Shown here one piece after another: positions 21,458 to 57,250 of a DNA stretch of 64,000 bases; the first letter of the stretch is position 1, and each line of letters starts with the position of its first letter. The notes under the pieces are model-generated. The model had not been told where the DNA came from. It searched no databases and saw nothing but the letters and a program-made list of their open reading frames with translations. The stretch lies in IMG/VR virus record IMGVR_UViG_3300028558_000791, positions 1 through 64,000 of that record; one strand, written 5' to 3'. The translations under genes were made by a program, and so were the position numbers.

Positions 21458-21826
21458 ATGTTTTTAGGTTTATACCCACTAGATAATTTTGGCCCCAAGT
21501 CCCACAATAAGGTAGGAGACTTCTTTCAATACAGATACATTGTAGAAGACTCCGAGTTTACTGAGGAATGGATAGGGCTTTGTAAGCAACGTCTCAACTA
21601 TTCTGATGTTAGATGCGGTGCCGTTATCTCATGCTATGAAGCAAAGAAGGATAACGTCCCCTACCAGCTAGCTCTGTATCATAGATACATGATGGATACC
21701 CATAAATGGTATAAGCTGGAGGATGAGATTAGGTATAACATCGAGCATACTCCTATGTATGGTGAGTATGCGCCGCAAGTTCTTCATTATATGAAGCGTA
21801 TCAATAACCTCAAAGCATTTTGGTAA
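21458..21826 (+). CDS. Hypothetical phage protein
   Basis: C-terminal RINNLKAFW resembles RIIKLKAFL of 62016-62222. Confidence 0.55.
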   Translation: MFLGLYPLDNFGPKSHNKVGDFFQYRYIVEDSEFTEEWIGLCKQRLNYSDVRCGAVISCYEAKKDNVPYQLALYHRYMMDTHKWYKLEDEIRYNIEHTPMYGEYAPQVLHYMKRINNLKAFW

Positions 21827-21831
21827 TACAA

Positions 21832-22344
21832 ATGTCTCACGAACCCGCTAGAGATTCTCATTGTTCATACTGTGGAACCAGATTCACGGAGCAAAAGGAA
21901 TGGCCCCGCAAATGTTTCCGTTGCTACAATGATTCCTATAAGAATCCACTGCCTGTAGTGGTTACTCTCTTGAATGTTTGGGAGAATGGTAAGCTCGGTA
22001 CCCTCATTCAGCAGCGTAATCATGACCCCAAGAAGGGTGAGTGGGCATTTACTGGTGGTTACATTGACCAGGATGAGACCTGGCAAGAGGCTATCGTCCG
22101 TGAAGTACGAGAAGAACTTGGACTTGAAACATCTGTAGGTGATTATCTACTGTCTGATGTTGTATCTAATACAGATAAGTCTAACCTATTAGTATTCTCT
22201 ATTTGTCTTAAAGCATTTGATATGAAGGAAATACATTTCATTCCTAATGCCGAGGTAACTGCAATCCAAATTATTCATGAACCAATCGAGTTGGCGTTCC
22301 CAACCCATACAGAAATGTTGGCTTTGAGATTCGAGAAGAAGTAA
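21832..22344 (+). CDS. NUDIX hydrolase with N-terminal zinc ribbon
   Basis: CSYC/CFRC; GGYID...REVREELG. Confidence 0.9.
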   Translation: MSHEPARDSHCSYCGTRFTEQKEWPRKCFRCYNDSYKNPLPVVVTLLNVWENGKLGTLIQQRNHDPKKGEWAFTGGYIDQDETWQEAIVREVREELGLETSVGDYLLSDVVSNTDKSNLLVFSICLKAFDMKEIHFIPNAEVTAIQIIHEPIELAFPTHTEMLALRFEKK

Positions 22345-22670
22345 TGGCTAGTACACCTGATTCAGAAAAGACCGAACGAATAGGATGGCTTTGTGTCACT
22401 ATGATGATACTCGGCCTGTTCCTTATGATTACTAAGAGTAATGCCTGTGGCTCTGTTTTTGGCTCTTGTAATGCTCCTGCTAAGACTGAGGCTTGCAAGG
22501 ATGAGTTCTTTGAGATTGGTGATAATAGTCGATACGGCAATAACCATTCTTGTACTCCAGGCGCACGCGCTGAAGTAGTCTCCTCTCCTCCCGCACCTAA
22601 GCCTGGTATCATATGCCACTGTATAAATAAGGATCAGGACGGCCAGGCTACTCAGGACGCCGGCAAGTAA
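22344..22670 (+). CDS. Membrane-anchored Cys-rich protein
   Basis: TM plus several Cys; DAG motif. Confidence 0.5.
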   Translation: MASTPDSEKTERIGWLCVTMMILGLFLMITKSNACGSVFGSCNAPAKTEACKDEFFEIGDNSRYGNNHSCTPGARAEVVSSPPAPKPGIICHCINKDQDGQATQDAGK

Positions 22671-22780
22671 GTAATTTAATAGATTAGTTTACGGGCTTGA
22701 CAATTGATTTTATAGGGTTAAGTTTATAGGGAAGGCTCCCATTCAGTGCTCCGGCACTCGTAGAGTAAGGACGAAATAAA

Positions 22781-23896
22781 ATGTCGTGGTCTGATAAACT
22801 AAAAGAAGCTGGCGTTAGTATCCATGTTATTGCGACTGGTGGTGGTGCTGGTTTACAGCAACTACTTTGGCAAGTACCTGGTAGCTCTGCTTATTTATCA
22901 GGCGCTAGTTTTCCTTACTCCCCTGAAGAACAGAGAGAGTTGCTTGGTTTCATGCCTGAGCATTTTTCTTCTGAGGAGGCAGCTATCGACCTAGCATCTG
23001 AAGCTTATATGAAGGCTTACAAGTTTGGTGGTAAGAAGCCAGTTGGACTTGGGATTGCAGCTTCAGTTGCTTCTGAGAAAATTCATCGTGGAGATCATCG
23101 AGTTTTTGCATGTATCATTACTGAAGAGCAAGTCCGTACTTGCCAGTATACCCTAGAGAAAGGTGCGGGTTCTGAGGTTAGATTGTTGGATGGTGAGACC
23201 TGTGATGACATTGGCTTCCTGCTTCTTACTGAAGCCCTGGCTTTAGATGAGGTTGAATACACTCATCCAGACCATCCGTATCAAACAAAGCGTGCAGAGG
23301 ATAAGGCCAAGGCTCGTTTCTTTGAGCGACCTTTCTTTGCAGCCAACGGCCAGCGTTTGAGTACCATGCCAAACAACAAGCATGTGGCCTTGATGCCTGG
23401 TGCTTACAATCCTCCTCATGAGGGACATTTTGGTACCGCTCAACATGTGATGGATGAGTATGGTCGCACCGTAGTGTATGAGGTAACGGCCGAACCTCCT
23501 CATAAAGAAGCGCTTCCAGTGCAGCTTTTACTACAACGAGCCAAGCTATTGCACGGCCGTGATAGACTCTTTACTCGTAAGGAGCCTTTTTACATCGATA
23601 AGGCCCGAGCATTCCCAGGTATTCCTTTAGTTCTTGGGGCAGATGCAATGGTTCGCATGTTGGATCCAAAGTGGGGAATAGAATTAACTCCTCTATTCAA
23701 GGAGTTCAAGAAGCTTGACACCAAATTATTGGTGGCAGGGCGTACTATTGGTGACAAGTTTGTTACCTTAGATGATATCTCAAAGAATTTACGCCTACAA
23801 GATCCTCATGCGTGGGGACAAACTGTAGGGGTGATGCTTCCAATCAGTGGTAGGATTGATATTTCTTCTACCGAACTGAGGGGTAAGTTGGTATAA
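22781..23896 (+). CDS. CinA/PncC-like domain fused to HIGH-type nucleotidyltransferase (NMNAT-like)
   Basis: ATGGGAG...VPGSS N-domain; PGAYNPPHEGH, LGAD, ISSTELR. Confidence 0.75.
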   Translation: MSWSDKLKEAGVSIHVIATGGGAGLQQLLWQVPGSSAYLSGASFPYSPEEQRELLGFMPEHFSSEEAAIDLASEAYMKAYKFGGKKPVGLGIAASVASEKIHRGDHRVFACIITEEQVRTCQYTLEKGAGSEVRLLDGETCDDIGFLLLTEALALDEVEYTHPDHPYQTKRAEDKAKARFFERPFFAANGQRLSTMPNNKHVALMPGAYNPPHEGHFGTAQHVMDEYGRTVVYEVTAEPPHKEALPVQLLLQRAKLLHGRDRLFTRKEPFYIDKARAFPGIPLVLGADAMVRMLDPKWGIELTPLFKEFKKLDTKLLVAGRTIGDKFVTLDDISKNLRLQDPHAWGQTVGVMLPISGRIDISSTELRGKLV

Positions 23897-23902
23897 AGAT
23901 AT

Positions 23903-24016
23903 GGAGCGGTGGCGGAATGGCGTACGCGGGTGGGAAAGGATCGTGCATGGTCCTGATCACCTATTCCAAACTAATGCAACTAGTAGGAATTGCACGTTCA
24001 ACTCGTGCCCGCTCCA
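23903..24016 (+). ncRNA. tRNA-like RNA with extended anticodon arm and long variable arm
   Basis: GGAGCGG/CCGCTCC acceptor, D arm, GCACG-TTCAACT-CGTGC T arm; no 7-nt anticodon loop. Confidence 0.75.
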
Positions 24017-24022
24017 CAATAG

Positions 24023-24415
24023 GTGACTGATATGTATAGTGTAACTCGCCGTTCACACGAGCGCTACGGCTCCGTTATCCACATCGAGAGATCGGAGAAT
24101 GGGAGGCTAATGACACCCTTCCAAGCGGTTCAATCTGCAATGAAAGAACGAAGACTTTGGATAGAATCTGGAGTAAAGAAAGTTCGAATCTTAGTAGATG
24201 ACAAGGTAATGTCAACCAAACAGGCAGAACACTGGGCTCATGAAGAGTATATCTCATTACCTAAGTGTGAAGGATGCGCCAAGATTCTTGATGGAGATAT
24301 TCATACTCATCAATTATCGGGTACTAAGTTCTTCTGTTCAAAGGTTTGTGCTGACCGGGACTATATTGAAGAAGTAGAGAGGCTGAAAGATGAAGAAGAA
24401 ATCGACTACCTCTGA
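24023..24415 (+). CDS. Hypothetical protein with C-terminal zinc finger
   Basis: CEGC...FCSKVC. Confidence 0.55.
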   Translation: MTDMYSVTRRSHERYGSVIHIERSENGRLMTPFQAVQSAMKERRLWIESGVKKVRILVDDKVMSTKQAEHWAHEEYISLPKCEGCAKILDGDIHTHQLSGTKFFCSKVCADRDYIEEVERLKDEEEIDYL

Positions 24416-34205: not shown

Positions 34206-35393
34206 ATGAAAGTAGTGTATACTGGCGAGGATATGCCTGAAACGTTTACAAAATCCATCTTTTTAGCTGGACCTACGCCACGCAATAAAGATGAGCAGGA
34301 ATCCTGGCGTCCCGATGCCTTGCAGATTCTAGAAGATAAAGGATTTGATGGAGTTGTTTTCGTCCCTGAAGGACGTGATGGCCAGTTTAAACTAGATTAT
34401 GATGACCAGGTTGGCTGGGAAGAGAAGTATCTCAACGTGGCTGATTGTATCGTCTTCTGGGTTCCTCGTGACCTAGAACCAGATAGCAAAGGTTATCCTA
34501 AGATGGCAGCCTTTACTACTAATGTAGAGTTTGGAACCTGGCAGTCGAGCGGTAAGATTGTATTTGGTGCTCCGCCTGACGCGACTAAGAATGGGTATTT
34601 AAAACATTACGCCGAGAAGTATAGCGTCCCGGTAGCTGAGTCGCTGGTGGAAACGCTAGACGATGCCATGGGAATGGTAGAAGATGGTGCCGAGCGTAGT
34701 GGCGGGGAGCGATATGTTCCACTGTTCATCTGGAAACAGGATTCATTTCAGTCTTGGTATAAATCTCAGACTGATGCCGGTAATCGTTTAGAAGAAGCGC
34801 GTTTGCTTTATAGCTTTCGTCCCCGCTATAAGAGTTTTGTTTTCCTTTGGATTCTACATACTAAAATCTATGTTGAATCAGAAGATAGGGTAAAAGATAA
34901 TGAATTTGTTCTGGCCCGTCCTGATATTTCTTCTGTCTGCCTATACCACAAAGTGTCTGCTGGCTTCCCTGCGTCGTGGAAAGACATCGAAGTAGTTTTG
35001 GTTAGGGAATTTAGGGCTCCAGCCTCTACTAAAAATGGATTCATTCTGGAACTTCCAGGAGGAAGCTCAACTAAGGAAGCTAATCCAGAAGAGGTTGCTG
35101 CCGAAGAGGTGCATGAGGAGATGGGATTTTATATAGAACCATCTCGTTTGAAACTGCATGGCACTCGTCAGCTAGCTGCTACACTTTCCTCACACAAGTC
35201 TCATCTTTTTTCAGCGGAAATTACCGAAGAAGAAGCTGATTGGTTTAAGTCTCAGGAAGATATTGCTCACGGTAAAGAAGAAGATAGCGAAAGAACATTT
35301 ATTGAAGTTCACCCCATCTCTCAGTTAGTAAATGAAGAGTCAATTGACTGGACTACATTAGGACAAATTCTATCTGTAATTTCTAAAGTTTAA
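34206..35393 (+). CDS. Nucleoside 2-deoxyribosyltransferase-like domain fused to NUDIX hydrolase
   Basis: IFLAGPTPR...WE...TNVEFG; ELPGGS...AAEEVHEEMG. Confidence 0.8.
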   Translation: MKVVYTGEDMPETFTKSIFLAGPTPRNKDEQESWRPDALQILEDKGFDGVVFVPEGRDGQFKLDYDDQVGWEEKYLNVADCIVFWVPRDLEPDSKGYPKMAAFTTNVEFGTWQSSGKIVFGAPPDATKNGYLKHYAEKYSVPVAESLVETLDDAMGMVEDGAERSGGERYVPLFIWKQDSFQSWYKSQTDAGNRLEEARLLYSFRPRYKSFVFLWILHTKIYVESEDRVKDNEFVLARPDISSVCLYHKVSAGFPASWKDIEVVLVREFRAPASTKNGFILELPGGSSTKEANPEEVAAEEVHEEMGFYIEPSRLKLHGTRQLAATLSSHKSHLFSAEITEEEADWFKSQEDIAHGKEEDSERTFIEVHPISQLVNEESIDWTTLGQILSVISKV

Positions 35394-35583: not shown

Positions 35584-35683
35584 TTTCATATACATACCTA
35601 TCAATACTGATATATAAAACGTATCGAAAGAGGGTTTCGATTTTCGGGCTACGTCCGTTTATTTTAGAAAATTATCTACGTCC

Positions 35684-35712: not shown

Positions 35713-35787
35713 GCGCAACTCGACGACATCGGCATGTTTCGTTTCAATTTGTTGGGACTATTTCCCAAATATGGAAGGTGTATTATT

Positions 35788-37419
35788 ATGTCAAACAAGA
35801 ACTTATTCTCAAACAAGAACAAGCTAACGGTATCTGTTTCTAAGAAGGTAACTCTGCCAACCAACACGGTTAATGAGGCAGGTGGAACTGCATATAAGCT
35901 GTCCGACAAGGCTGCTTTGGCGCAGTACGCCATGACTGGTACGTTCAACGGTACATACTATGCATCCGATGCAGATCAACTTAAGAAGGTCCTTGAGTTG
36001 GCAAACAAGGTAGATCCAAAGTTCGTCGCTAAGCTGGCAGTGTACGCACGCCAGAGAGGCTTGATGAAGGATATGCCTGCCGTTCTTGCAGCCGTCATTG
36101 CTGGAAGAGACGCTGACCTATTGGCTACGATTTTCGATAGAGTAATCGACAATCCAAAGATGCTTCGTAACTTCGTTCAGATCATCCGATCTGGCGCAAC
36201 TGGCCGTAAGTCCTTGGGAACTCGCCCAAAGAAGTTGGTACAGAAGTATCTTGAGAACTTGACCGACGAGCAGTTGTTCAAGGCTGATGTTGGTAACGAT
36301 CCGTCGTTGCAGGACATCATCAAGTTGGTTCACCCAAAGCCAACTAACAAGCAGCGTTCTGCGTTGTACGGTTACTTGCTCGACAAGGAGTACAACAAGA
36401 GAGACCTCGTGTCTTTGGCACAACAGTTCGAAGCATTCAAGAAGGATATGAAGGGAGAGATCCCAGATGTTCCGTTCCAGATGTTGACGGCTCTGCCATT
36501 GACTGATACGCACTGGAAGCAGATTGCTGAGAATGCAACCTGGAACCAGATCCGTATGAACCTCAATACGTTTGCTCGTCACAACGTATTGGCTGACAAG
36601 AAGCTGGTCGATGTTTTGGCAGCAAAGCTATCGGACCCAGAGCAGGTCAAGCGTTCCAAGACGTTCCCATATCAGTTGTTCACCACTTACTTGAACGTGG
36701 ACGCCACGATTCCAAGCAAGCTGACGAACGCATTGCAAGATGCGGCTGATTCTTCTTTGGATAACATTCCTGAGTTCCCAGGAAAGGTCTTCGTAATGGT
36801 TGACACTTCTGGTTCTATGGGCTCTGCCGTCACCGGTAAGAGAGTAAATCCAAAGACTGGTAAGGAGGAATCCTTTACGACTAAGGCTCGATGCGTAGAC
36901 GTGGCAGCACTTTTCGCAGCAGCAATCTTGCGCAAGAATCCAGACACTGAGATTGTGCCATTCGACACCTCAGTACATGTTGGTCACCGATTCAATCCAC
37001 GTGATTCGATCATGACCAATGCAAAGACTCTAGCTTCATTCGGTGGTGGTGGTACCAACTGCTCCGCTGCTTTGGAGTATGTCAACAAAAAGGCTGGCAA
37101 GGGCGACCTTGTCATCTACGTGTCTGACAATGAGTCATGGGTTGATACGAAGGCATCTAACTCAGGTGTGTTCGGATACTACCGCCGTAATGGCACTGCC
37201 ACTATGGAAGAGTGGAATAAGTTCGCAGCCCGTAACAAGGGTGCAAAGCTTGTCTGTATCGACATTCAACCAAACTCCTCCACCCAAGCACACGACAGGG
37301 ATGACATCCTGAACGTGGGAGGATTCAGTGACCAGGTGTTCGATGTAATCGCAAGATTCGCCGAGCTTGGAAACAACAAGGATCTCTGGATCAAGACGAT
37401 CGAAGACGTCAAACTCTAA
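35788..37419 (+). CDS. rsr: Ro60 / TROVE domain RNA-binding protein (Rsr) with vWA domain
   Basis: NEAGGTAY, TGTFNGTYY, LVHPKP, RMNLNTFARH, MIDAS VDTSGSM, GGGTNCS, VSDNESW. Confidence 0.93.
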   Translation: MSNKNLFSNKNKLTVSVSKKVTLPTNTVNEAGGTAYKLSDKAALAQYAMTGTFNGTYYASDADQLKKVLELANKVDPKFVAKLAVYARQRGLMKDMPAVLAAVIAGRDADLLATIFDRVIDNPKMLRNFVQIIRSGATGRKSLGTRPKKLVQKYLENLTDEQLFKADVGNDPSLQDIIKLVHPKPTNKQRSALYGYLLDKEYNKRDLVSLAQQFEAFKKDMKGEIPDVPFQMLTALPLTDTHWKQIAENATWNQIRMNLNTFARHNVLADKKLVDVLAAKLSDPEQVKRSKTFPYQLFTTYLNVDATIPSKLTNALQDAADSSLDNIPEFPGKVFVMVDTSGSMGSAVTGKRVNPKTGKEESFTTKARCVDVAALFAAAILRKNPDTEIVPFDTSVHVGHRFNPRDSIMTNAKTLASFGGGGTNCSAALEYVNKKAGKGDLVIYVSDNESWVDTKASNSGVFGYYRRNGTATMEEWNKFAARNKGAKLVCIDIQPNSSTQAHDRDDILNVGGFSDQVFDVIARFAELGNNKDLWIKTIEDVKL

Positions 37420-37494: not shown

Positions 37495-37911
37495 ATGAAT
37501 AAGTTAGAAGATTTAGTGGCGGCAGCAAGACTAGCCGCCCAACATTCGTACAGTCCATACAGCAACTTCAAAGTTGCATCCGCCGTAGAAATGGAAGATG
37601 GAAGCATCTTTAGCGGCTCTAATGTAGAGAATGCGTCTTACGGTCTCACTATCTGTGCAGAGCGCAACGCAATCTTTCAAGCTGTGTCTAAGGGACATCG
37701 CCTAATAAAACGTATCATTGTCTACGCTCCTTCACCAACTGTTCGTACTGGCCCTTGTGGAGCCTGTAGGCAGGTAATTAAAGAATTTGCCGATGAATAT
37801 ACACTAATCATTGGCGCCTGTAACTCAGACGATATATTAACTTTTACAATGGAAGATTTGTTACCAAAGAGTTTTGGTCCCGATAATCTTCTAAAGAAAA
37901 GAAACCAATGA
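37495..37911 (+). CDS. cdd: Cytidine deaminase
   Basis: YSPYS, NVENASYGLTICAER, PCGACRQ. Confidence 0.93.
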   Translation: MNKLEDLVAAARLAAQHSYSPYSNFKVASAVEMEDGSIFSGSNVENASYGLTICAERNAIFQAVSKGHRLIKRIIVYAPSPTVRTGPCGACRQVIKEFADEYTLIIGACNSDDILTFTMEDLLPKSFGPDNLLKKRNQ

Positions 37912-38753
37912 TTAAGCGAAATGGCGTAGAGGTAATGAACGCCCGCACTAAAAACGTCTCTATTGCCAAAGAAACAATCGCTATAATCAACAACCAAAAA
38001 TACACCAATCTCAATGGAGATACAGTAGATATCTCAGTAGAAATGGATGCGGCCATAGACGGCACTCATTACTATGAGGCTGACGTTTTAGTCGGCATGC
38101 CCGCCGATCAGGCTCCCATTCACGCTACGATTGAGGTAGTAAATGAGACTACTGCTCAAGCTGCTGTTCGATTGCAAGCTAAAGGAAAAACTAATCTAGT
38201 TGCCCTTAACTTCGCTTCAGCGCGTAATCAAGGTGGAGGCTTTCTTTCTGGAGCTTTGGCTCAAGAAGAAGACTTGTGTAGGGCTTCTGGCCTATATGGT
38301 TGCCTGAAACGCAAACCATTGTTCTACAATGCAAACATCCTGTGTGACGATGCATTCTATACAAATGGAGTTCTCTACTCACCTAACGTTCCGTTCTTTA
38401 GGGATGATCATAATCTGTTTTTAGAGAAGCCTTTTCCGCTTTCTATCGTCTCAGCACCAGCTCCTAACCTTTCTAGCACCAAGTCGAACATCGACCCTAA
38501 AGTATTAACCTCTCTTATTAGAGAGCGTACTGTTAGGATTCTACAGGTGGCTCATGCCAATGGGCATAAGAACATCATTTTAGGTGCCTGGGGCTGTGGA
38601 GCCTTCGGAAATGATCCTGAAATGGTATCAAAAGCATTTATGTTGGCCCTAACTAAAGTTCCATATTTCGAGCATGTAACCTTTGCGGTATATGATACCA
38701 GAGAGCCGTACGTTTTATATGAAACGTTCAAAGAAGTCTGTAACGCTGTATAG
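37908..38753 (+). CDS. TIGR02452/DUF2263 bacterial-type poly(ADP-ribose) glycohydrolase
   Basis: LNFASA..GGGF..GALAQEEDLCRAS, LGAWGCGAFGN. Confidence 0.9.
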   Translation: MIKRNGVEVMNARTKNVSIAKETIAIINNQKYTNLNGDTVDISVEMDAAIDGTHYYEADVLVGMPADQAPIHATIEVVNETTAQAAVRLQAKGKTNLVALNFASARNQGGGFLSGALAQEEDLCRASGLYGCLKRKPLFYNANILCDDAFYTNGVLYSPNVPFFRDDHNLFLEKPFPLSIVSAPAPNLSSTKSNIDPKVLTSLIRERTVRILQVAHANGHKNIILGAWGCGAFGNDPEMVSKAFMLALTKVPYFEHVTFAVYDTREPYVLYETFKEVCNAV

Positions 38754-40807: not shown

Positions 40808-41416
40808 ATGACTAAAGCATTATATGTTGGTAGTTTCGACCCTATCACCAACGGTCATATTGATATTATGAAGCGTAGCTTACAGTTCTGTAAGCAACTG
40901 GTGATTGGGATAGGTATCAATCCTAACAAGACTACTATGTTTGATGAGCGGGAGAGGAACTCCATGATTTTTCAAACGATAGTGAAGGAGTTTGACTTCC
41001 TTCATTCAACCAATACTTCGGTTGCTTCTTTTCAGGGACTTACAGTAGAGTATGCTAAAGAAATTGGTGCAACGATTCTAATTCGCGGAATTAGATCCGT
41101 TTCTGATTTCGAATATGAAATTAATTTGGCCAACATCAACAAGGTTCTGGCCCCATCAATTGAAACAATTTTCCTGCCCACCAGTCCTGATCTGGCGGTT
41201 GTCTCCTCTTCAATGGTAAAAGAAATTGCAAAGTTGAACGGAGATATTTCAAGATTCGTACCCAGCTATATTGCCGAGAGGATTCATTCAAAATTCGGTT
41301 TCTTCAAGCATGGCAAGACAGAGATTGGCACTGATACTATCAATAGATTACGAGAAGCTACAGTAGCTATTGAGAAAGAATTGGGAATCAAACCAAAAGA
41401 TGAGGGCGAAAAATAA
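40808..41416 (+). CDS. coaD: Phosphopantetheine adenylyltransferase
   Basis: GSFDPITNGH, IRGIRSVSDFEYE, VSSSMVKEIA. Confidence 0.92.
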   Translation: MTKALYVGSFDPITNGHIDIMKRSLQFCKQLVIGIGINPNKTTMFDERERNSMIFQTIVKEFDFLHSTNTSVASFQGLTVEYAKEIGATILIRGIRSVSDFEYEINLANINKVLAPSIETIFLPTSPDLAVVSSSMVKEIAKLNGDISRFVPSYIAERIHSKFGFFKHGKTEIGTDTINRLREATVAIEKELGIKPKDEGEK

Positions 41417-41561: not shown

Positions 41562-41644
41562 GGGGGAGTAGCTCAGCGAAAGAGCGCAAGGATACCGTAA
41601 GGAAAACCTTGAGGTCCCTGGTTCAATTCCAGGCTCCCCCACCA
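41562..41644 (+). ncRNA. tRNA-like RNA with 15-nt anticodon loop
   Basis: Intact acceptor, D and T arms plus ACCA; CAAGG-ATACCGTAAGGAAAA-CCTTG. Confidence 0.85.
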
Positions 41645-42727: not shown

Positions 42728-42801
42728 GACTTTGTGGACAAATTATTAAGTCACTCCCGTTAGAGGGAGAGATGTAAGTGCAAGGCTTGCCAAGGTCACC
42801 A
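42728..42801 (+). ncRNA. tRNA-like RNA with 6-nt anticodon loop (GTTAGA)
   Basis: GACTTTG/CAAGGTC plus ACCA; CTCCC/GGGAG; T-loop TGCAAGG. Confidence 0.7.
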
Positions 42802-43428: not shown

Positions 43429-43515
43429 TCTGTGGTAGCCTAATGGTAAGGCAGGTGGCTGTTAACCACCCGGTGGTAAAACACTTTCTAGGTTCGAGTC
43501 CTAGCTGCAGAGCCA
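43429..43515 (+). tRNA. tRNA-Asn(GTT) with long variable arm
   Basis: GGTGG-CTGTTAA-CCACC; V-arm GGTG-GTAAAA-CACT. Confidence 0.85.
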
Positions 43516-44572: not shown

Positions 44573-44666
44573 CGATCACGCGTAGCTGGTTGCTCGGGCG
44601 AGACTTATAATCTTGCAAGGACTGATATTCCGTAACGGCAGGGTTCGATTCCCTGGTGATCGACCA
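44573..44666 (+). tRNA. Atypical tRNA-Ile(TAT), 6-bp anticodon stem, long variable region
   Basis: CGATCAC/GTGATCG plus ACCA; GCGAGA-CTTATAA-TCTTGC. Confidence 0.75.
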
Positions 44667-50072: not shown

Positions 50073-50149
50073 GGGTCTTTTGATGTAAAGGCTGGCCTCT
50101 AGACTTTAGTGCTAGAGGACATCGGGTTCGACTCCCGAATGATCCGCCA
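50073..50149 (+). ncRNA. tRNA-like RNA, no D stem, loop CT-TTA-GT
   Basis: GGGTC/GATCC plus GCCA; CCTCTAG/CTAGAGG; TCGGG-TTCGACT-CCCGA. Confidence 0.65.
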
Positions 50150-56566: not shown

Positions 56567-56898
56567 ACATGAGCTTAGCTTGGTCAAAGGATATGGAATT
56601 GGATCCTGGTACGTTTGGAGGTTCTCCGGCATGCCATGTTTTAGTAGATATGATGAATCACAATGTTATTCCTATTATAGAGAAGCATCGTGTTTTATCA
56701 TTCATCAATGATGCTATCTATCAATTCAAGTGGTTATCCACTGTGAAGGAGTATGGCGTCAAGGAGAGGTCTATGGTTCTGATGAGGGACGATATTCTAT
56801 CTAGGGTGGATCATATGCCATATCCTGCCAAGTTTAATTCACATCTGAAGAACGTGATAACTCACCACTTCAGACGATACTTGAAAGAAGAGACCTAG
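56563..56898 (+). CDS. Hypothetical protein
   Basis: Packed ORF. Confidence 0.5.
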   Translation: MNMSLAWSKDMELDPGTFGGSPACHVLVDMMNHNVIPIIEKHRVLSFINDAIYQFKWLSTVKEYGVKERSMVLMRDDILSRVDHMPYPAKFNSHLKNVITHHFRRYLKEET

Positions 56899-57250
56899 AC
56901 AATCGCTCCCGTAAGGAGAGGAAAGTCGGAGCTACGTAGGGCAATTTGCTGGCTAACGGCCAGGCGCAGTGATGCGACAGATAGTGCAACAGAAAAGAAA
57001 CCGCCATGAATCCGCCAGGCCCGAAAGGGAGCAACGGTAGATGGTAAGGGTGAAATGGTGGGGTAAGAGCCCACCGCACCTATAGTGATATAGGTGGCAA
57101 GGTAAACCTCAGATGTAGCAAGCTAAATAGAGAGTGACTTGTCCGGTCAATACTCTCGGGTTAGTGCTGGAGCCATTAGGTAACTAACGGCCAAGATTAA
57201 TGATTGTCTCGATTTATAGACAGGACTCCGCTTATAGGGTGTCTTCTTTC
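56883..57250 (+). ncRNA. rnpB: RNase P RNA, bacterial type A
   Basis: GAGGAAAGTCGGAG, AGTGCAACAGAAA, GGGTGAAA..GGTAAGAG, GGTAAACC, ACAGGACTCCGCTTA; P1 GAAAGAAGA/TCTTCTTTC. Confidence 0.93.

What the first reader, a model, noticed from the sequence alone, without database searches (positions are those of the whole stretch)
23903..24016. Isolated type II tRNA-like RNA with a rod-like extended anticodon arm
Seen: complete acceptor, D and T arms. The anticodon stem GGGTG/CACCT continues through an internal loop into AGGATC/GGTCCT, there is a ~28-nt variable arm, and no CCA is encoded. It cannot decode as is, yet the pairing is intact.
Basis: seen in the sequence. Interest (0 to 1): 0.6.

Follow-up and report, generated by a model that had tools for sequence, protein, structure and literature searches.

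The report
Non-decoding tRNA mimic of megaphages
A 480-kb soil phage and its relatives carry a conserved leucine-tRNA look-alike in which a long rod replaces the anticodon and the rod's tip base-pairs with the tip of the extra arm, so it cannot read codons and is probably a new kind of tRNA mimic working off the ribosome.

Summary
Window 23903-24016 folds as a class II cloverleaf with a 35-nt rod in place of the anticodon arm and a 28-nt variable arm.

It fills the gap between two genes of a 480,838-bp phage record. That record also holds about 60 tRNAs, a tmRNA, its own RNase P RNA and a Ro60 gene.

Nine other distinct homologues were found in related megaphage contigs. Acceptor stem and D stem are invariant or nearly so. 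All other helices change by compensatory substitutions, and the tertiary 19-56 pair also covaries.

New point: the loop capping the rod (GUGNAU) is the reverse complement of the variable-arm loop (AUNCAC), and the two covary. This indicates a 6-7-bp kissing interaction.

Nine of ten copies encode A73-CCA; the window copy has CAA. The D arm, A15-U48 and A73 are leucine-type.

There is no 7-nt anticodon loop and no U33. ARAGORN's intron mode gives seven different anticodons for ten orthologues, so it is neither a decoding nor an intron-bearing tRNA.

Best reading: a tRNA-processed, off-ribosome tRNA(Leu) mimic, probably self-pairing between molecules. Its partner is unknown. Expression is untested because no RNA runs exist. 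I found no published description.

The parts
23903..23909 (+). Acceptor stem, 5' strand (GGAGCGG). Expected RNase P cleavage site lies just before 23903.
   Evidence: Pairs with 24009-24015. Six of 7 pairs are invariant in 10 homologues; pair 7-66 changes G-C to A-U in L013.
23910..23927 (+). U8, G9 and the D arm: 3-bp stem GCG/CGC with loop GAAUGGCGUA holding A14, A15 and G18G19. Leucine-type D arm.
   Evidence: Invariant in the 8 close homologues. G19 becomes A in L013 together with C56 to U in the T loop. Matches the D arms of the phage's own class II tRNA-Leu genes.
23928..23962 (+). Rod-like arm in the anticodon position: proximal stem 23928-23933/23957-23962, GA-rich internal loop 23934-23936/23955-23956, distal helix 23937-23942/23949-23954.
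   Evidence: Fold. All 6 distal pairs show changes on both sides. Arm length is kept at 35-39 nt although the sequences differ. It is a continuous A/U-rich helix in L013.
23943..23948 (+). Apical loop GUGCAU of the rod, one partner of the loop-loop (kissing) pairing.
   Evidence: Consensus GUGNAU in 9 homologues and GUACAAU in L023. Complementary to the variable-arm loop in every copy.
23963..23990 (+). Long variable arm: 5 bp, small internal loop, 4 bp.
   Evidence: Seven of 9 pairs show compensatory changes. Length is 26-29 nt in all homologues.
23974..23980 (+). Variable-arm loop AUGCAAC, the second partner of the kissing pairing (one A bulged).
   Evidence: The middle pair takes C-G (4 sequences), U-A (4) and A-U (1). 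Only 1 of 500 shuffles reaches the observed covariation. L023 keeps the pairing with further changes on both sides.
23991..24008 (+). U48 (partner of A15) and the T arm GCACG-UUCAACU-CGUGC.
   Evidence: The T stem changes by compensation to AUAGG/CCUAU (L013) and GUAGG/CCUAC (L023). U54, U55, C56 and A58 are present.
24009..24019 (+). Acceptor 3' strand (24009-24015), discriminator A73 (24016), then CAA where the 9 other homologues have CCA.
   Evidence: CAA is confirmed in two DNA runs.
22781..23896 (+). Upstream gene for a CinA-like plus nucleotidyltransferase (NMNAT-like) protein. Its stop codon lies 6 nt before the RNA.
   Evidence: Pfam CTP_transf_like and CinA. Syntenic in most homologous loci.
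24032..24415 (+). Downstream gene for a conserved 127-aa protein: alpha/beta N-terminal domain, C4 zinc ribbon, acidic tail. It starts 13 nt after the RNA.
   Evidence: Lies 0-390 nt downstream of the RNA wherever the sequence upstream of the gene is held; the L007 contig ends 14 nt before the gene. In L023 the CCA abuts its ATG. AF2 pLDDT 89; no family or fold match.
35734..37419 (+). Phage Ro60 orthologue (TROVE plus Ro60 vWA domains), a candidate protein partner about 12 kb downstream on the same strand.
   Evidence: Present at the same relative place in all five long records that carry the RNA.
56887..57250 (+). Phage-encoded class A RNase P RNA, the likely 5'-processing ribozyme for this RNA and the phage's tRNAs.
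   Evidence: Rfam RF00010, 272.5 bits. Also present in G001, G002, G003 and G006 at 247-280 bits.

Best explanation
It is a functional, non-decoding RNA derived from a class II tRNA(Leu) gene and specific to one lineage of soil megaphages.

Proposed mechanism, step by step:

1. Inferred: it is transcribed with its flanking genes. RNase P cuts it out at G1; the phage carries its own RNase P RNA. The 3' end is trimmed to A-CCA. In this genome, where the gene reads CAA, one of the phage's two CCA-adding-type enzymes would rebuild the end.
2. Shown by covariation: it folds into a normal L-shaped tRNA core. This covers the acceptor, D and T arms and includes the tertiary 19-56 pair.
3. Shown: the anticodon arm is replaced by a rod of about 14-15 stacked layers. 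It has no 7-nt loop and no U33, so it cannot read a codon.
4. Shown by complementarity and covariation: the rod's terminal loop GUGNAU pairs with the variable-arm loop AUNCAC over 6-7 bp.
I therefore think the pairing is more likely between two molecules, giving a closed head-to-tail dimer or a chain, than within one. I put this at about 60:40.
6. Inferred: the RNA then works off the ribosome as a stable tRNA mimic. It presents a leucine-type acceptor-elbow module (A73-CCA, A15-U48, G18G19/U55C56, U8-A14) to proteins that read that end of tRNA.

My single best guess for the role, at about 0.3, is a decoy or scaffold that host LeuRS can charge. It would occupy tRNA-end-binding factors during infection.

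Confidence by layer: conserved structured non-decoding tRNA derivative about 0.95; loop-loop pairing about 0.85; off-ribosome mimic acting through the acceptor-elbow end about 0.6.
For: **Fold and chance control.**

**Conservation.** Ten distinct homologues occur in megaphage contigs whose neighbouring proteins are only 46-85% identical.

**Covariation.** It is seen in every helix except the D stem, which never varies, and in the 19-56 tertiary pair.

**Loop-loop pairing.**
- It holds in all ten copies.
- The middle pair shows three Watson-Crick types, and L023 carries additional compensated changes.
- Slid controls pair in 21-57% of cells, against 98% for the proposed pairing.
- Arm lengths are conserved at 35-39 and 26-29 nt.

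**Not decoding.** There is no Rfam tRNA hit even at E<=10. Default ARAGORN finds nothing. Its intron mode is inconsistent across orthologues.

**Leucine type.** The covariance model's next-best hits in the genome are the two tRNA-Leu(CAA) genes. The D arm equals those of the phage's tRNA-Leu genes and the discriminator is A. In E. coli, A73, A15-U48, G18G19 and the D/T-loop contacts define leucine identity; the anticodon arm and variable arm are dispensable (PMC9976931).

**Processing machinery in the phage.** RNase P RNA and two PolyA_pol/CCA-adding-type ORFs.

**Precedent.** Covarying loop-loop pairs first read as tertiary turned out to be intermolecular in phage-associated ROOL and GOLLD RNAs (PMC12286853).
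Against: - Expression is untested, because no RNA runs were found.
- No partner protein is identified.
- The phage encodes no Ile/Leu/Val-type or class IIb synthetase, no L/F- or Bpt-type transferase and no FemAB. Any charging or use must therefore rely on host enzymes of an unknown host.
- The first four acceptor pairs (GGAG) resemble the phage's tRNA-Ser rather than tRNA-Leu, so amino-acid identity is not certain.
- The kissing helix has only one covarying column among the nine closest sequences. Relatedness inflates shuffle tests.
- Whether the pairing is intra- or intermolecular rests on rough geometry only.
- Acceptor-stem invariance is not explained by known LeuRS recognition.
Confidence: 0.6

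Rival explanations
1. It is this phage lineage's Y-RNA equivalent, an unpermuted counterpart of YrlA. The tRNA-like module and long arm would tether the phage Ro60 protein to an effector.
For: - All five long records with the RNA encode a Ro60 orthologue about 12 kb downstream on the same strand.
- None of them has a YrlA at or above Rfam's cut-off.
- Two Ro60 phages outside the lineage have a YrlA-like RNA directly after Ro60, at 43.7 and 35 bits, and lack this RNA.
- Known YrlA RNAs are tRNA mimics whose anticodon-stem position continues as a long helix. M. smegmatis YrlA is cut by RNase P and receives CCA (PMC4201824; bioRxiv 10.1101/312249).
Against: - It lies 12 kb from Ro60, whereas Y RNAs are normally adjacent.
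- The co-occurrence is not independent, because all records are syntenic relatives.
- The Ro-binding motif GNCGAAN0-1G is absent from 9 of 10 copies.
- The long arm's sequence is free to vary.
- The ends are in the acceptor stem, not in the long helix.
- A conserved two-hairpin element with UCGAAAG and a U-run sits directly upstream of Ro60 and is a rival Y-RNA candidate.
- The kissing pairing is not explained.
Confidence: 0.15
2. It is a dedicated aminoacyl carrier. Host LeuRS would charge it and its shape would keep it off the ribosome. It would donate leucine to a non-ribosomal aminoacyl-transferase, as special tRNAs do for cell-wall or protein N-terminal modification.
For: - The leucine identity set and A73-CCA are kept although the anticodon arm is remodelled.
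- LeuRS does not need the anticodon or the variable arm (PMC9976931).
- Non-proteinogenic tRNAs that serve transferases are known (own knowledge).
Against: No L/F-transferase, Bpt/ATE, FemAB or phage synthetase was found in the 480-kb genome. Other transferase families were not searched. The kissing architecture is not needed for this role.
Confidence: 0.12
3. It is only a cis-acting processing signal (tRNA punctuation). A tRNA-shaped RNase P and 3'-end cleavage site would separate the upstream and downstream messages and define the 5' end of the zinc-ribbon gene's mRNA.
For: - It fills the whole intergenic gap, lying 6 nt after a stop codon and 13 nt before a start codon preceded by AGGTGA.
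- In L023 the CCA abuts the ATG, so 3' processing would give a leaderless mRNA.
- The phage has its own RNase P RNA.
- No promoter or terminator of its own stands out.
Against: A bare cleavage signal needs only the acceptor-T module. It does not explain the conserved arm lengths, the conserved loop sequences with covarying complementarity, or the leucine-type D-loop and Levitt-pair features kept across deep divergence.
Confidence: 0.1
4. It is a decoding tRNA interrupted by a short intron or insertion that is removed to give a normal anticodon loop.
For: ARAGORN in intron mode calls it tRNA-Asp(atc) with a 20-nt intron. A second tRNA in the window, at 41562-41644, also has an enlarged anticodon loop.
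Against: - The ten orthologues get Asp, Phe, Ser (two anticodons), His, Trp and a stop-codon anticodon (tta), with different intron sites.
- There is no U33, no bulge-helix-bulge motif and no group I intron. Rfam finds nothing there.
- The inserted helix evolves by compensatory change and its loop pairs with the variable loop, so it belongs to the mature structure.
- No RtcB ligase is encoded.
Confidence: 0.03
5. It is a decaying tRNA pseudogene or a chance fold.
For: This copy lacks CCA, and standard tRNA finders reject it.
Against: The core is 100% identical across phages whose proteins differ by 15-50%. There are 21 compensated pairs, and 0 of 500 shuffles reach the observed values.
Confidence: 0.01

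Closest known systems
Bacterial or phage class II tRNA-Leu
   Same: 7-bp acceptor stem, 3-bp D stem, a D loop of the GGCGGAAUGGC type, A15-U48, G18G19/U55C56, long variable arm and A73-CCA. These genes are the best non-self hits of the covariance model.
   Different: The anticodon arm is a 35-39-nt rod with no 7-nt loop and no U33. The variable arm is about twice the usual length. The two loops pair with each other. The first four acceptor pairs look Ser-like. It does not reach Rfam's tRNA model at all.
YrlA / bacterial Y RNAs (Rfam RF02553), partners of Ro60
   Same: A tRNA mimic with conserved D, T and acceptor modules and a long helix in the anticodon-stem position. Found in phages that encode Ro60. 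One member is cut by RNase P and gets CCA (PMC4201824; bioRxiv 10.1101/312249).
   Different: YrlA is circularly permuted relative to tRNA, with its ends in the long helix and its acceptor closed by a loop. It has no free CCA as a rule, carries the GNCGAAN0-1G motif and lies next to Ro60. This RNA has tRNA topology, lacks the motif in 9 of 10 copies, lies 12 kb away and scores below threshold on RF02553.
tmRNA tRNA-like domain
   Same: A non-decoding acceptor/T-arm module with CCA whose body continues as a long helix in place of the anticodon arm. The phage also has a real tmRNA.
   Different: It has no reading frame, no pseudoknot ring and no G3-U70 alanine identity. It has a full D arm and is only about 117 nt long.
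ROOL, GOLLD and other self-assembling RNAs of phages
   Same: Phage-encoded, associated with tRNA-rich genomes, with conserved and covarying kissing loops that can be intermolecular (PMC12286853; bioRxiv 10.64898/2026.07.01.735769).
   Different: There is no sequence or secondary-structure relationship. Those RNAs are mostly much larger and not tRNA-shaped. Oligomerisation of this RNA is only inferred.
Non-proteinogenic tRNAs used by aminoacyl-transferases (for example the staphylococcal tRNA-Gly for peptidoglycan; own knowledge)
   Same: tRNA genes kept for an off-ribosome use of the acceptor end.
   Different: Those keep a normal anticodon arm and differ mainly in EF-Tu-binding pairs. No transferase was found here.

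Membership tests
Canonical decoding tRNA (Rfam RF00005) | Cloverleaf core with acceptor, D and T arms and D/T-loop tertiary pairs | tested here: met
   The 19-56 pair covaries.
Canonical decoding tRNA (Rfam RF00005) | 5-bp anticodon stem closed by a 7-nt loop with U33 and an anticodon | tested here: not met
   The sequence shows a 35-nt arm with a 6-nt terminal loop and no U33. The same holds in all homologues.
Canonical decoding tRNA (Rfam RF00005) | Reaches the family model's gathering score, or is called by a tRNA finder | tested here: not met
   No RF00005 hit even at E<=10. Default ARAGORN finds none in 10 of 10.
Intron-containing tRNA | Same intron site and same anticodon in orthologues, with a recognisable intron type (group I, or bulge-helix-bulge) | tested here: not met
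   Seven different anticodons and varying intron sites. No intron family in Rfam. By inspection the internal loop is symmetric and GA-rich, not bulge-helix-bulge.
tRNA-Leu identity (bacterial LeuRS substrate) | A73, A15-U48, G18G19 with U55C56, and U8-A14. The anticodon is not required (PMC9976931). | tested here: met
   Present in all ten copies, with 19-56 compensated in L013. G2-C71 and A3-U70 are Ser-like.
tRNA-Leu identity (bacterial LeuRS substrate) | Is actually leucylated | not testable with these tools
   Needs an aminoacylation assay.
YrlA / Y RNA (RF02553) | Scores at or above 69 bits on the family model | tested here: not met
   No hit at the locus. No hit at or above the cut-off in five genomes.
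YrlA / Y RNA (RF02553) | 5' and 3' ends form the Ro60-binding helix carrying GNCGAAN0-1G; the acceptor-like stem is closed by a loop | tested here: not met
   The ends lie in the acceptor stem and the long helix is closed by a loop. The motif is seen only in L023.
YrlA / Y RNA (RF02553) | Encoded next to a Ro60 gene | tested here: inconclusive
   A Ro60 gene is present in all five long records, but about 12 kb away. The records are not independent.
YrlA / Y RNA (RF02553) | Binds Ro60 | not testable with these tools
   Needs a gel shift or co-purification.
tmRNA | tRNA-like domain plus a tag reading frame and pseudoknots; alanine identity G3-U70 | tested here: not met
   ARAGORN's tmRNA search calls only 170047-170403 in the genome. 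This RNA has A3-U70.
tRNA-Sec | 8+5 or 9+4 acceptor/T helix and a 6-bp D stem | tested here: not met
   7+5 helix and a 3-bp D stem.
Kissing-loop self-assembling RNAs | Conserved complementary loops with covariation | tested here: met
   and L023.
Kissing-loop self-assembling RNAs | Forms dimers or oligomers in solution | not testable with these tools
   Needs a native gel, SEC-MALS or cryo-EM.

The most novel reading that the evidence does not exclude
A new class of phage tRNA mimic. It would be a leucine-type acceptor-elbow module mounted on two stiff arms whose terminal loops are mutually complementary. Molecules would then join head-to-tail into closed dimers or longer assemblies. These would display chargeable CCA ends off the ribosome and would sequester or organise tRNA-binding proteins during megaphage infection. 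Candidate proteins are host LeuRS, EF-Tu, acceptor-end toxins or the phage's Ro60.
Probability: 0.3. Interest if true: 0.85.

Novelty: new variant of a known kind. Interest (0 to 1): 0.72.

Why it matters
tRNA mimics such as tmRNA, YrlA and viral tRNA-like structures have each revealed a distinct piece of biology. This one keeps tRNA topology and a chargeable-looking leucine-type end, but locks its anticodon arm to its variable arm by a covarying kissing interaction. I could not find that architecture described anywhere.

It occurs in megaphages that bring their own RNase P RNA, Ro60, tmRNA and about 60 tRNAs. It is therefore a handle on how such phages rewire host tRNA biology.

It is short, at about 117 nt, and all its claims can be tested in vitro within weeks: RNase P cleavage, leucylation, dimerisation and Ro60 binding. 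If the loops pair between molecules, it would be a small natural self-assembling RNA built on a tRNA scaffold.

Tried and rejected
**Routes that found nothing**
- Search of the GenBank phage collection with the locus: no match.
- Rfam at permissive thresholds on the locus: only a chance THF-II hit at E=6.9.
- Exact-pattern scan of 185,579 species genomes for this acceptor plus D arm: three hits, none a tRNA. It is therefore not a copy of a tRNA in that collection; the host is unknown and may not be represented there.

**Hypotheses considered and rejected**
- Intron hypothesis: rejected.

**Candidate partners**
- Searches of the whole phage genome found no tRNA-synt_1, tRNA-synt_2b, Leu/Phe-transferase, ATE_C, FemAB or RtcB.
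- The canonical YrlA model reaches its cut-off in none of five genomes. The sub-threshold hits look like adjacent tRNA pairs, an interpretation not checked hit by hit.
- Downstream 127-aa protein: no Pfam or PHROG family beyond a weak zinc-finger hit, and no convincing Atlas neighbour. The AF2 model is confident (pLDDT 89), but Foldseek against PDB gave nothing at E<=0.001; only zinc-ribbon pieces such as L24e or MYND matched. Its role stays open.

**Expression**
- No RNA run holds the locus. DNA contigs only confirm the sequence.

- Read laying was given 1,201 letters.
- No alternative genetic code was used.

Full report
**Observation**

The stretch 23903-24016 (+) is as described. It has:
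- a 7-bp acceptor stem;
- a 3-bp D stem with a 10-nt loop;
- a proximal stem that runs through a small GA-rich internal loop into a second 6-bp helix capped by GUGCAU;
- a 28-nt variable arm;
- a T arm with loop UUCAACU;
- discriminator A, followed by CAA.

The minimum-free-energy fold is this cloverleaf at -46 kcal/mol, with z = -3.3 against shuffles. Default ARAGORN and Rfam's tRNA model both miss it, even at E<=10.

**Setting**

The window is the first 64 kb of a 480,838-bp IMG/VR virus record with 43% G+C. The record holds about 60 tRNA genes, a tmRNA and a class A RNase P RNA at 56887-57250 (272.5 bits).

The RNA fills the gap between two genes on the same strand:
- Upstream is a CinA/NMNAT-like gene, whose stop codon lies 6 nt before the RNA.
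- Downstream is a gene for a 127-aa zinc-ribbon protein, whose start lies 13 nt after the RNA and is preceded by AGGTGA.

The nearest tRNA genes are 14.6 and 17.5 kb away.

**Homologues**

Protein-anchored and pattern searches of IMG/VR and JGI metagenomes gave nine further distinct copies:
- Seven are close.
- One (L023) lies in a 63-kb fragment, G003.
- One (L013, the same as L026) lies in a 433-448-kb phage, G006, with 36% G+C at the RNA locus.

The neighbouring zinc-ribbon protein is 46-85% identical among them.

Conservation and variation:
- The acceptor stem, D arm and T arm are identical in the eight close copies.
- Everything else varies by compensation.

On the model-fitted alignment of nine sequences, 97.7% of pair cells are standard pairs and 21 pairs have changes on both sides. 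No shuffle out of 500 reaches this, and slid controls give 38-46% pairing. RNAalifold on an independent MAFFT alignment of all ten predicts the same cloverleaf, with 16 of 35 pairs compensated.

In L013 the tertiary G19-C56 pair becomes A-U, pair 7-66 becomes A-U and the T stem is rebuilt. The L-shaped core is therefore under selection, not only the secondary structure.

Arm lengths stay at 35-39 and 26-29 nt, although in L013 both arms are different, continuous A/U-rich helices.

**New feature: loop-loop pairing**

The rod's terminal loop is the reverse complement of the variable-arm loop in every copy.

| Rod loop | Variable-arm loop | Copies |
|---|---|---|
| GUGCAU | AUGC(A/U)AC | window, L002, L008 |
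| GUGCAA | AUGCAC | L003 |
| GUGUAU | AUACAC | L009, L010, L012, L013 |
| GUGAAU | AUUCAC | L011 |
| GUACAAU | AUUGUAAC | L023 |

Counted alone on nine sequences, the six pairs are 98% paired against 21-57% when slid. The middle pair takes three Watson-Crick forms, and 1 of 500 shuffles reaches the observed covariation. L023 adds further compensated changes.

I take this as a 6-7-bp kissing interaction. In most copies both loops are fully consumed by the pairing and the arms are stiff. By rough geometry, which is my inference, an intermolecular head-to-tail contact is somewhat more likely than an intramolecular one.

In ROOL and GOLLD, covarying loop pairs once read as tertiary proved to be quaternary (PMC12286853).

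**Not a decoding or intron-bearing tRNA**

No copy has a 7-nt loop or U33. ARAGORN in intron mode gives Asp, Phe, Ser (two anticodons), His, Trp and a stop-codon anticodon (tta) for the ten orthologues, with different intron sites. The 'insert' evolves as a helix and takes part in the kissing pair, so it belongs to the mature RNA.

**Ancestry and identity**

The covariance model's next-best hits in the genome are the two tRNA-Leu(CAA) genes, at 39-41 bits. The D arm matches the phage's class II tRNA-Leu genes and the discriminator is A. The first four acceptor pairs (GGAG) look like the phage's tRNA-Ser.

The features that define leucine identity in E. coli are A73, A15-U48, G18G19 and the D/T-loop contacts; U8-A14, reported for Aquifex aeolicus LeuRS, is also present. 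All are present here, and the anticodon and variable arms are dispensable for LeuRS (PMC9976931).

Nine of ten copies encode CCA. The window's CAA is real in two DNA runs. The phage has two PolyA_pol/CCA-adding-type ORFs.

No bacterial genome among 185,579 species carries a tRNA with this acceptor plus D arm.

**Possible partners**

A Ro60 orthologue (TROVE plus Ro60 vWA) lies at 35734-37419. All five long records with the RNA have one about 12 kb downstream on the same strand. All five also have an RNase P RNA. None has a YrlA at Rfam's cut-off.

Two Ro60 phages outside the lineage have a YrlA-like RNA right after Ro60 and lack this RNA. That complementary pattern is suggestive of a Y-RNA-like role.

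Against it:
- The records are syntenic relatives, so the co-occurrence is not independent.
- The RNA lacks the Ro-binding motif and has the opposite topology to YrlA (PMC4201824; bioRxiv 10.1101/312249).
- A conserved small two-hairpin element with a U-run sits directly upstream of Ro60.

The genome has no Ile/Leu/Val-type or class IIb synthetase, L/F-transferase, ATE/Bpt, FemAB or RtcB.

The downstream zinc-ribbon protein always follows the RNA. In L023 the CCA abuts its ATG. The protein has no recognisable family or fold.

**Mechanism and odds**

- Shown: a conserved L-shaped tRNA core, a non-decoding rod and complementary covarying loops.
- Inferred: RNase P and CCA processing, charging by host LeuRS, intermolecular pairing and action off the ribosome through the acceptor-elbow end.

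My odds:

| Reading | Probability |
|---|---|
| Off-ribosome tRNA(Leu) mimic, in general | about 0.6 |
| Ro60 partner | 0.15 |
| Aminoacyl donor | 0.12 |
| Processing signal only | 0.1 |
| Intron-bearing tRNA | 0.03 |
| Pseudogene | 0.01 |

Within the general mimic reading, a decoy or scaffold for tRNA-end-binding factors is about 0.3.

**Novelty and limits**

Four full-text searches found no description of such an RNA. It is a new family within the known kind 'tRNA mimic', with a new architecture.

Limits:
- There is no expression data.
- There are only ten sequences from one phage lineage.
- The host is unknown.
- There is no 3D modelling.

Noticed in passing
window 56887-57250 (+): A complete class A RNase P RNA (272.5 bits) is encoded by the phage. 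Four related phage records have one too (247-280 bits). The huge-phage papers in the library do not mention phage RNase P RNA.
   Followed up: partly
window 35734-37419 (+): A phage Ro60 orthologue (TROVE plus Ro60 vWA domains) with no canonical YrlA next to it. More distant Ro60 phages (L041, L042) do have a YrlA-like RNA directly after the gene.
   Followed up: yes
window about 35596-35666 (+): A conserved small element directly upstream of the Ro60 promoter. It has a -10-like box, a hairpin AUCGAAA-GAGGG-UUUCGAU, a second GC hairpin and a U-run. It is conserved in G001 and G002 and loosely in G003. It may be a small RNA, a possible Y-RNA candidate, or just a terminator.
   Followed up: partly
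window 41562-41644 (+): A second non-canonical tRNA. It has a Phe-like body with ACCA, but a 15-nt anticodon loop holding a CC-GUAA-GG mini-hairpin. The enlarged loop is conserved in G001 and G002; in G002 no simple excision would restore U33-GAA.
   Followed up: partly
window 50073-50149; G000 172924-172997 and 173183-173255: ARAGORN calls suppressor-type tRNAs: anticodon UUA once and CUA twice. This hints at stop-codon suppression or recoding in part of the genome. The ORFs around the finding read normally in table 11.
   Followed up: no
window 42728-42801, 43429-43515, 44573-44666; G000 76761-76844: Several other odd tRNA genes: a 2-base 'anticodon' call, and Asn, Ile(UAU) and Gly genes with extra or long variable arms.
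   Followed up: no
window 21820-23896, 34206-35393, 37908-38753, 40808-41416: A cluster of NAD/ADP-ribose genes around the RNA. It includes a Nudix gene, a CinA plus NMNAT-like gene, a nucleoside deoxyribosyltransferase-like plus Nudix gene, a microbial PARG and a second cytidylyltransferase-like gene. This looks like NAD salvage or counter-defence.
   Followed up: no
L025 3020-3123, L027 1062-1166 (-), L024 91-233 and 291-403: Other viral contigs carry RNAs with the same acceptor stem and a Leu-type D arm (plus a similar T arm in L024 and L027; L025 lacks the G18G19 and UUC loop motifs), but with different non-decoding middles. In L025, for example, the anticodon stem is capped by a GACG tetraloop. 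They may form a wider superfamily of remodelled tRNA-Leu derivatives.
   Followed up: partly
L023 4428-4433 (-): In the 63-kb relative the RNA's CCA is followed directly by the ATG of the zinc-ribbon gene. 3' processing would leave a leaderless mRNA.
   Followed up: partly
window 23983-24020, run X1 record 2: The source sample holds a low-depth 208-nt contig that matches only the 3' part of the RNA, with 5 differences and different flanks. It appears to be a further variant from another phage in the same soil.
   Followed up: no
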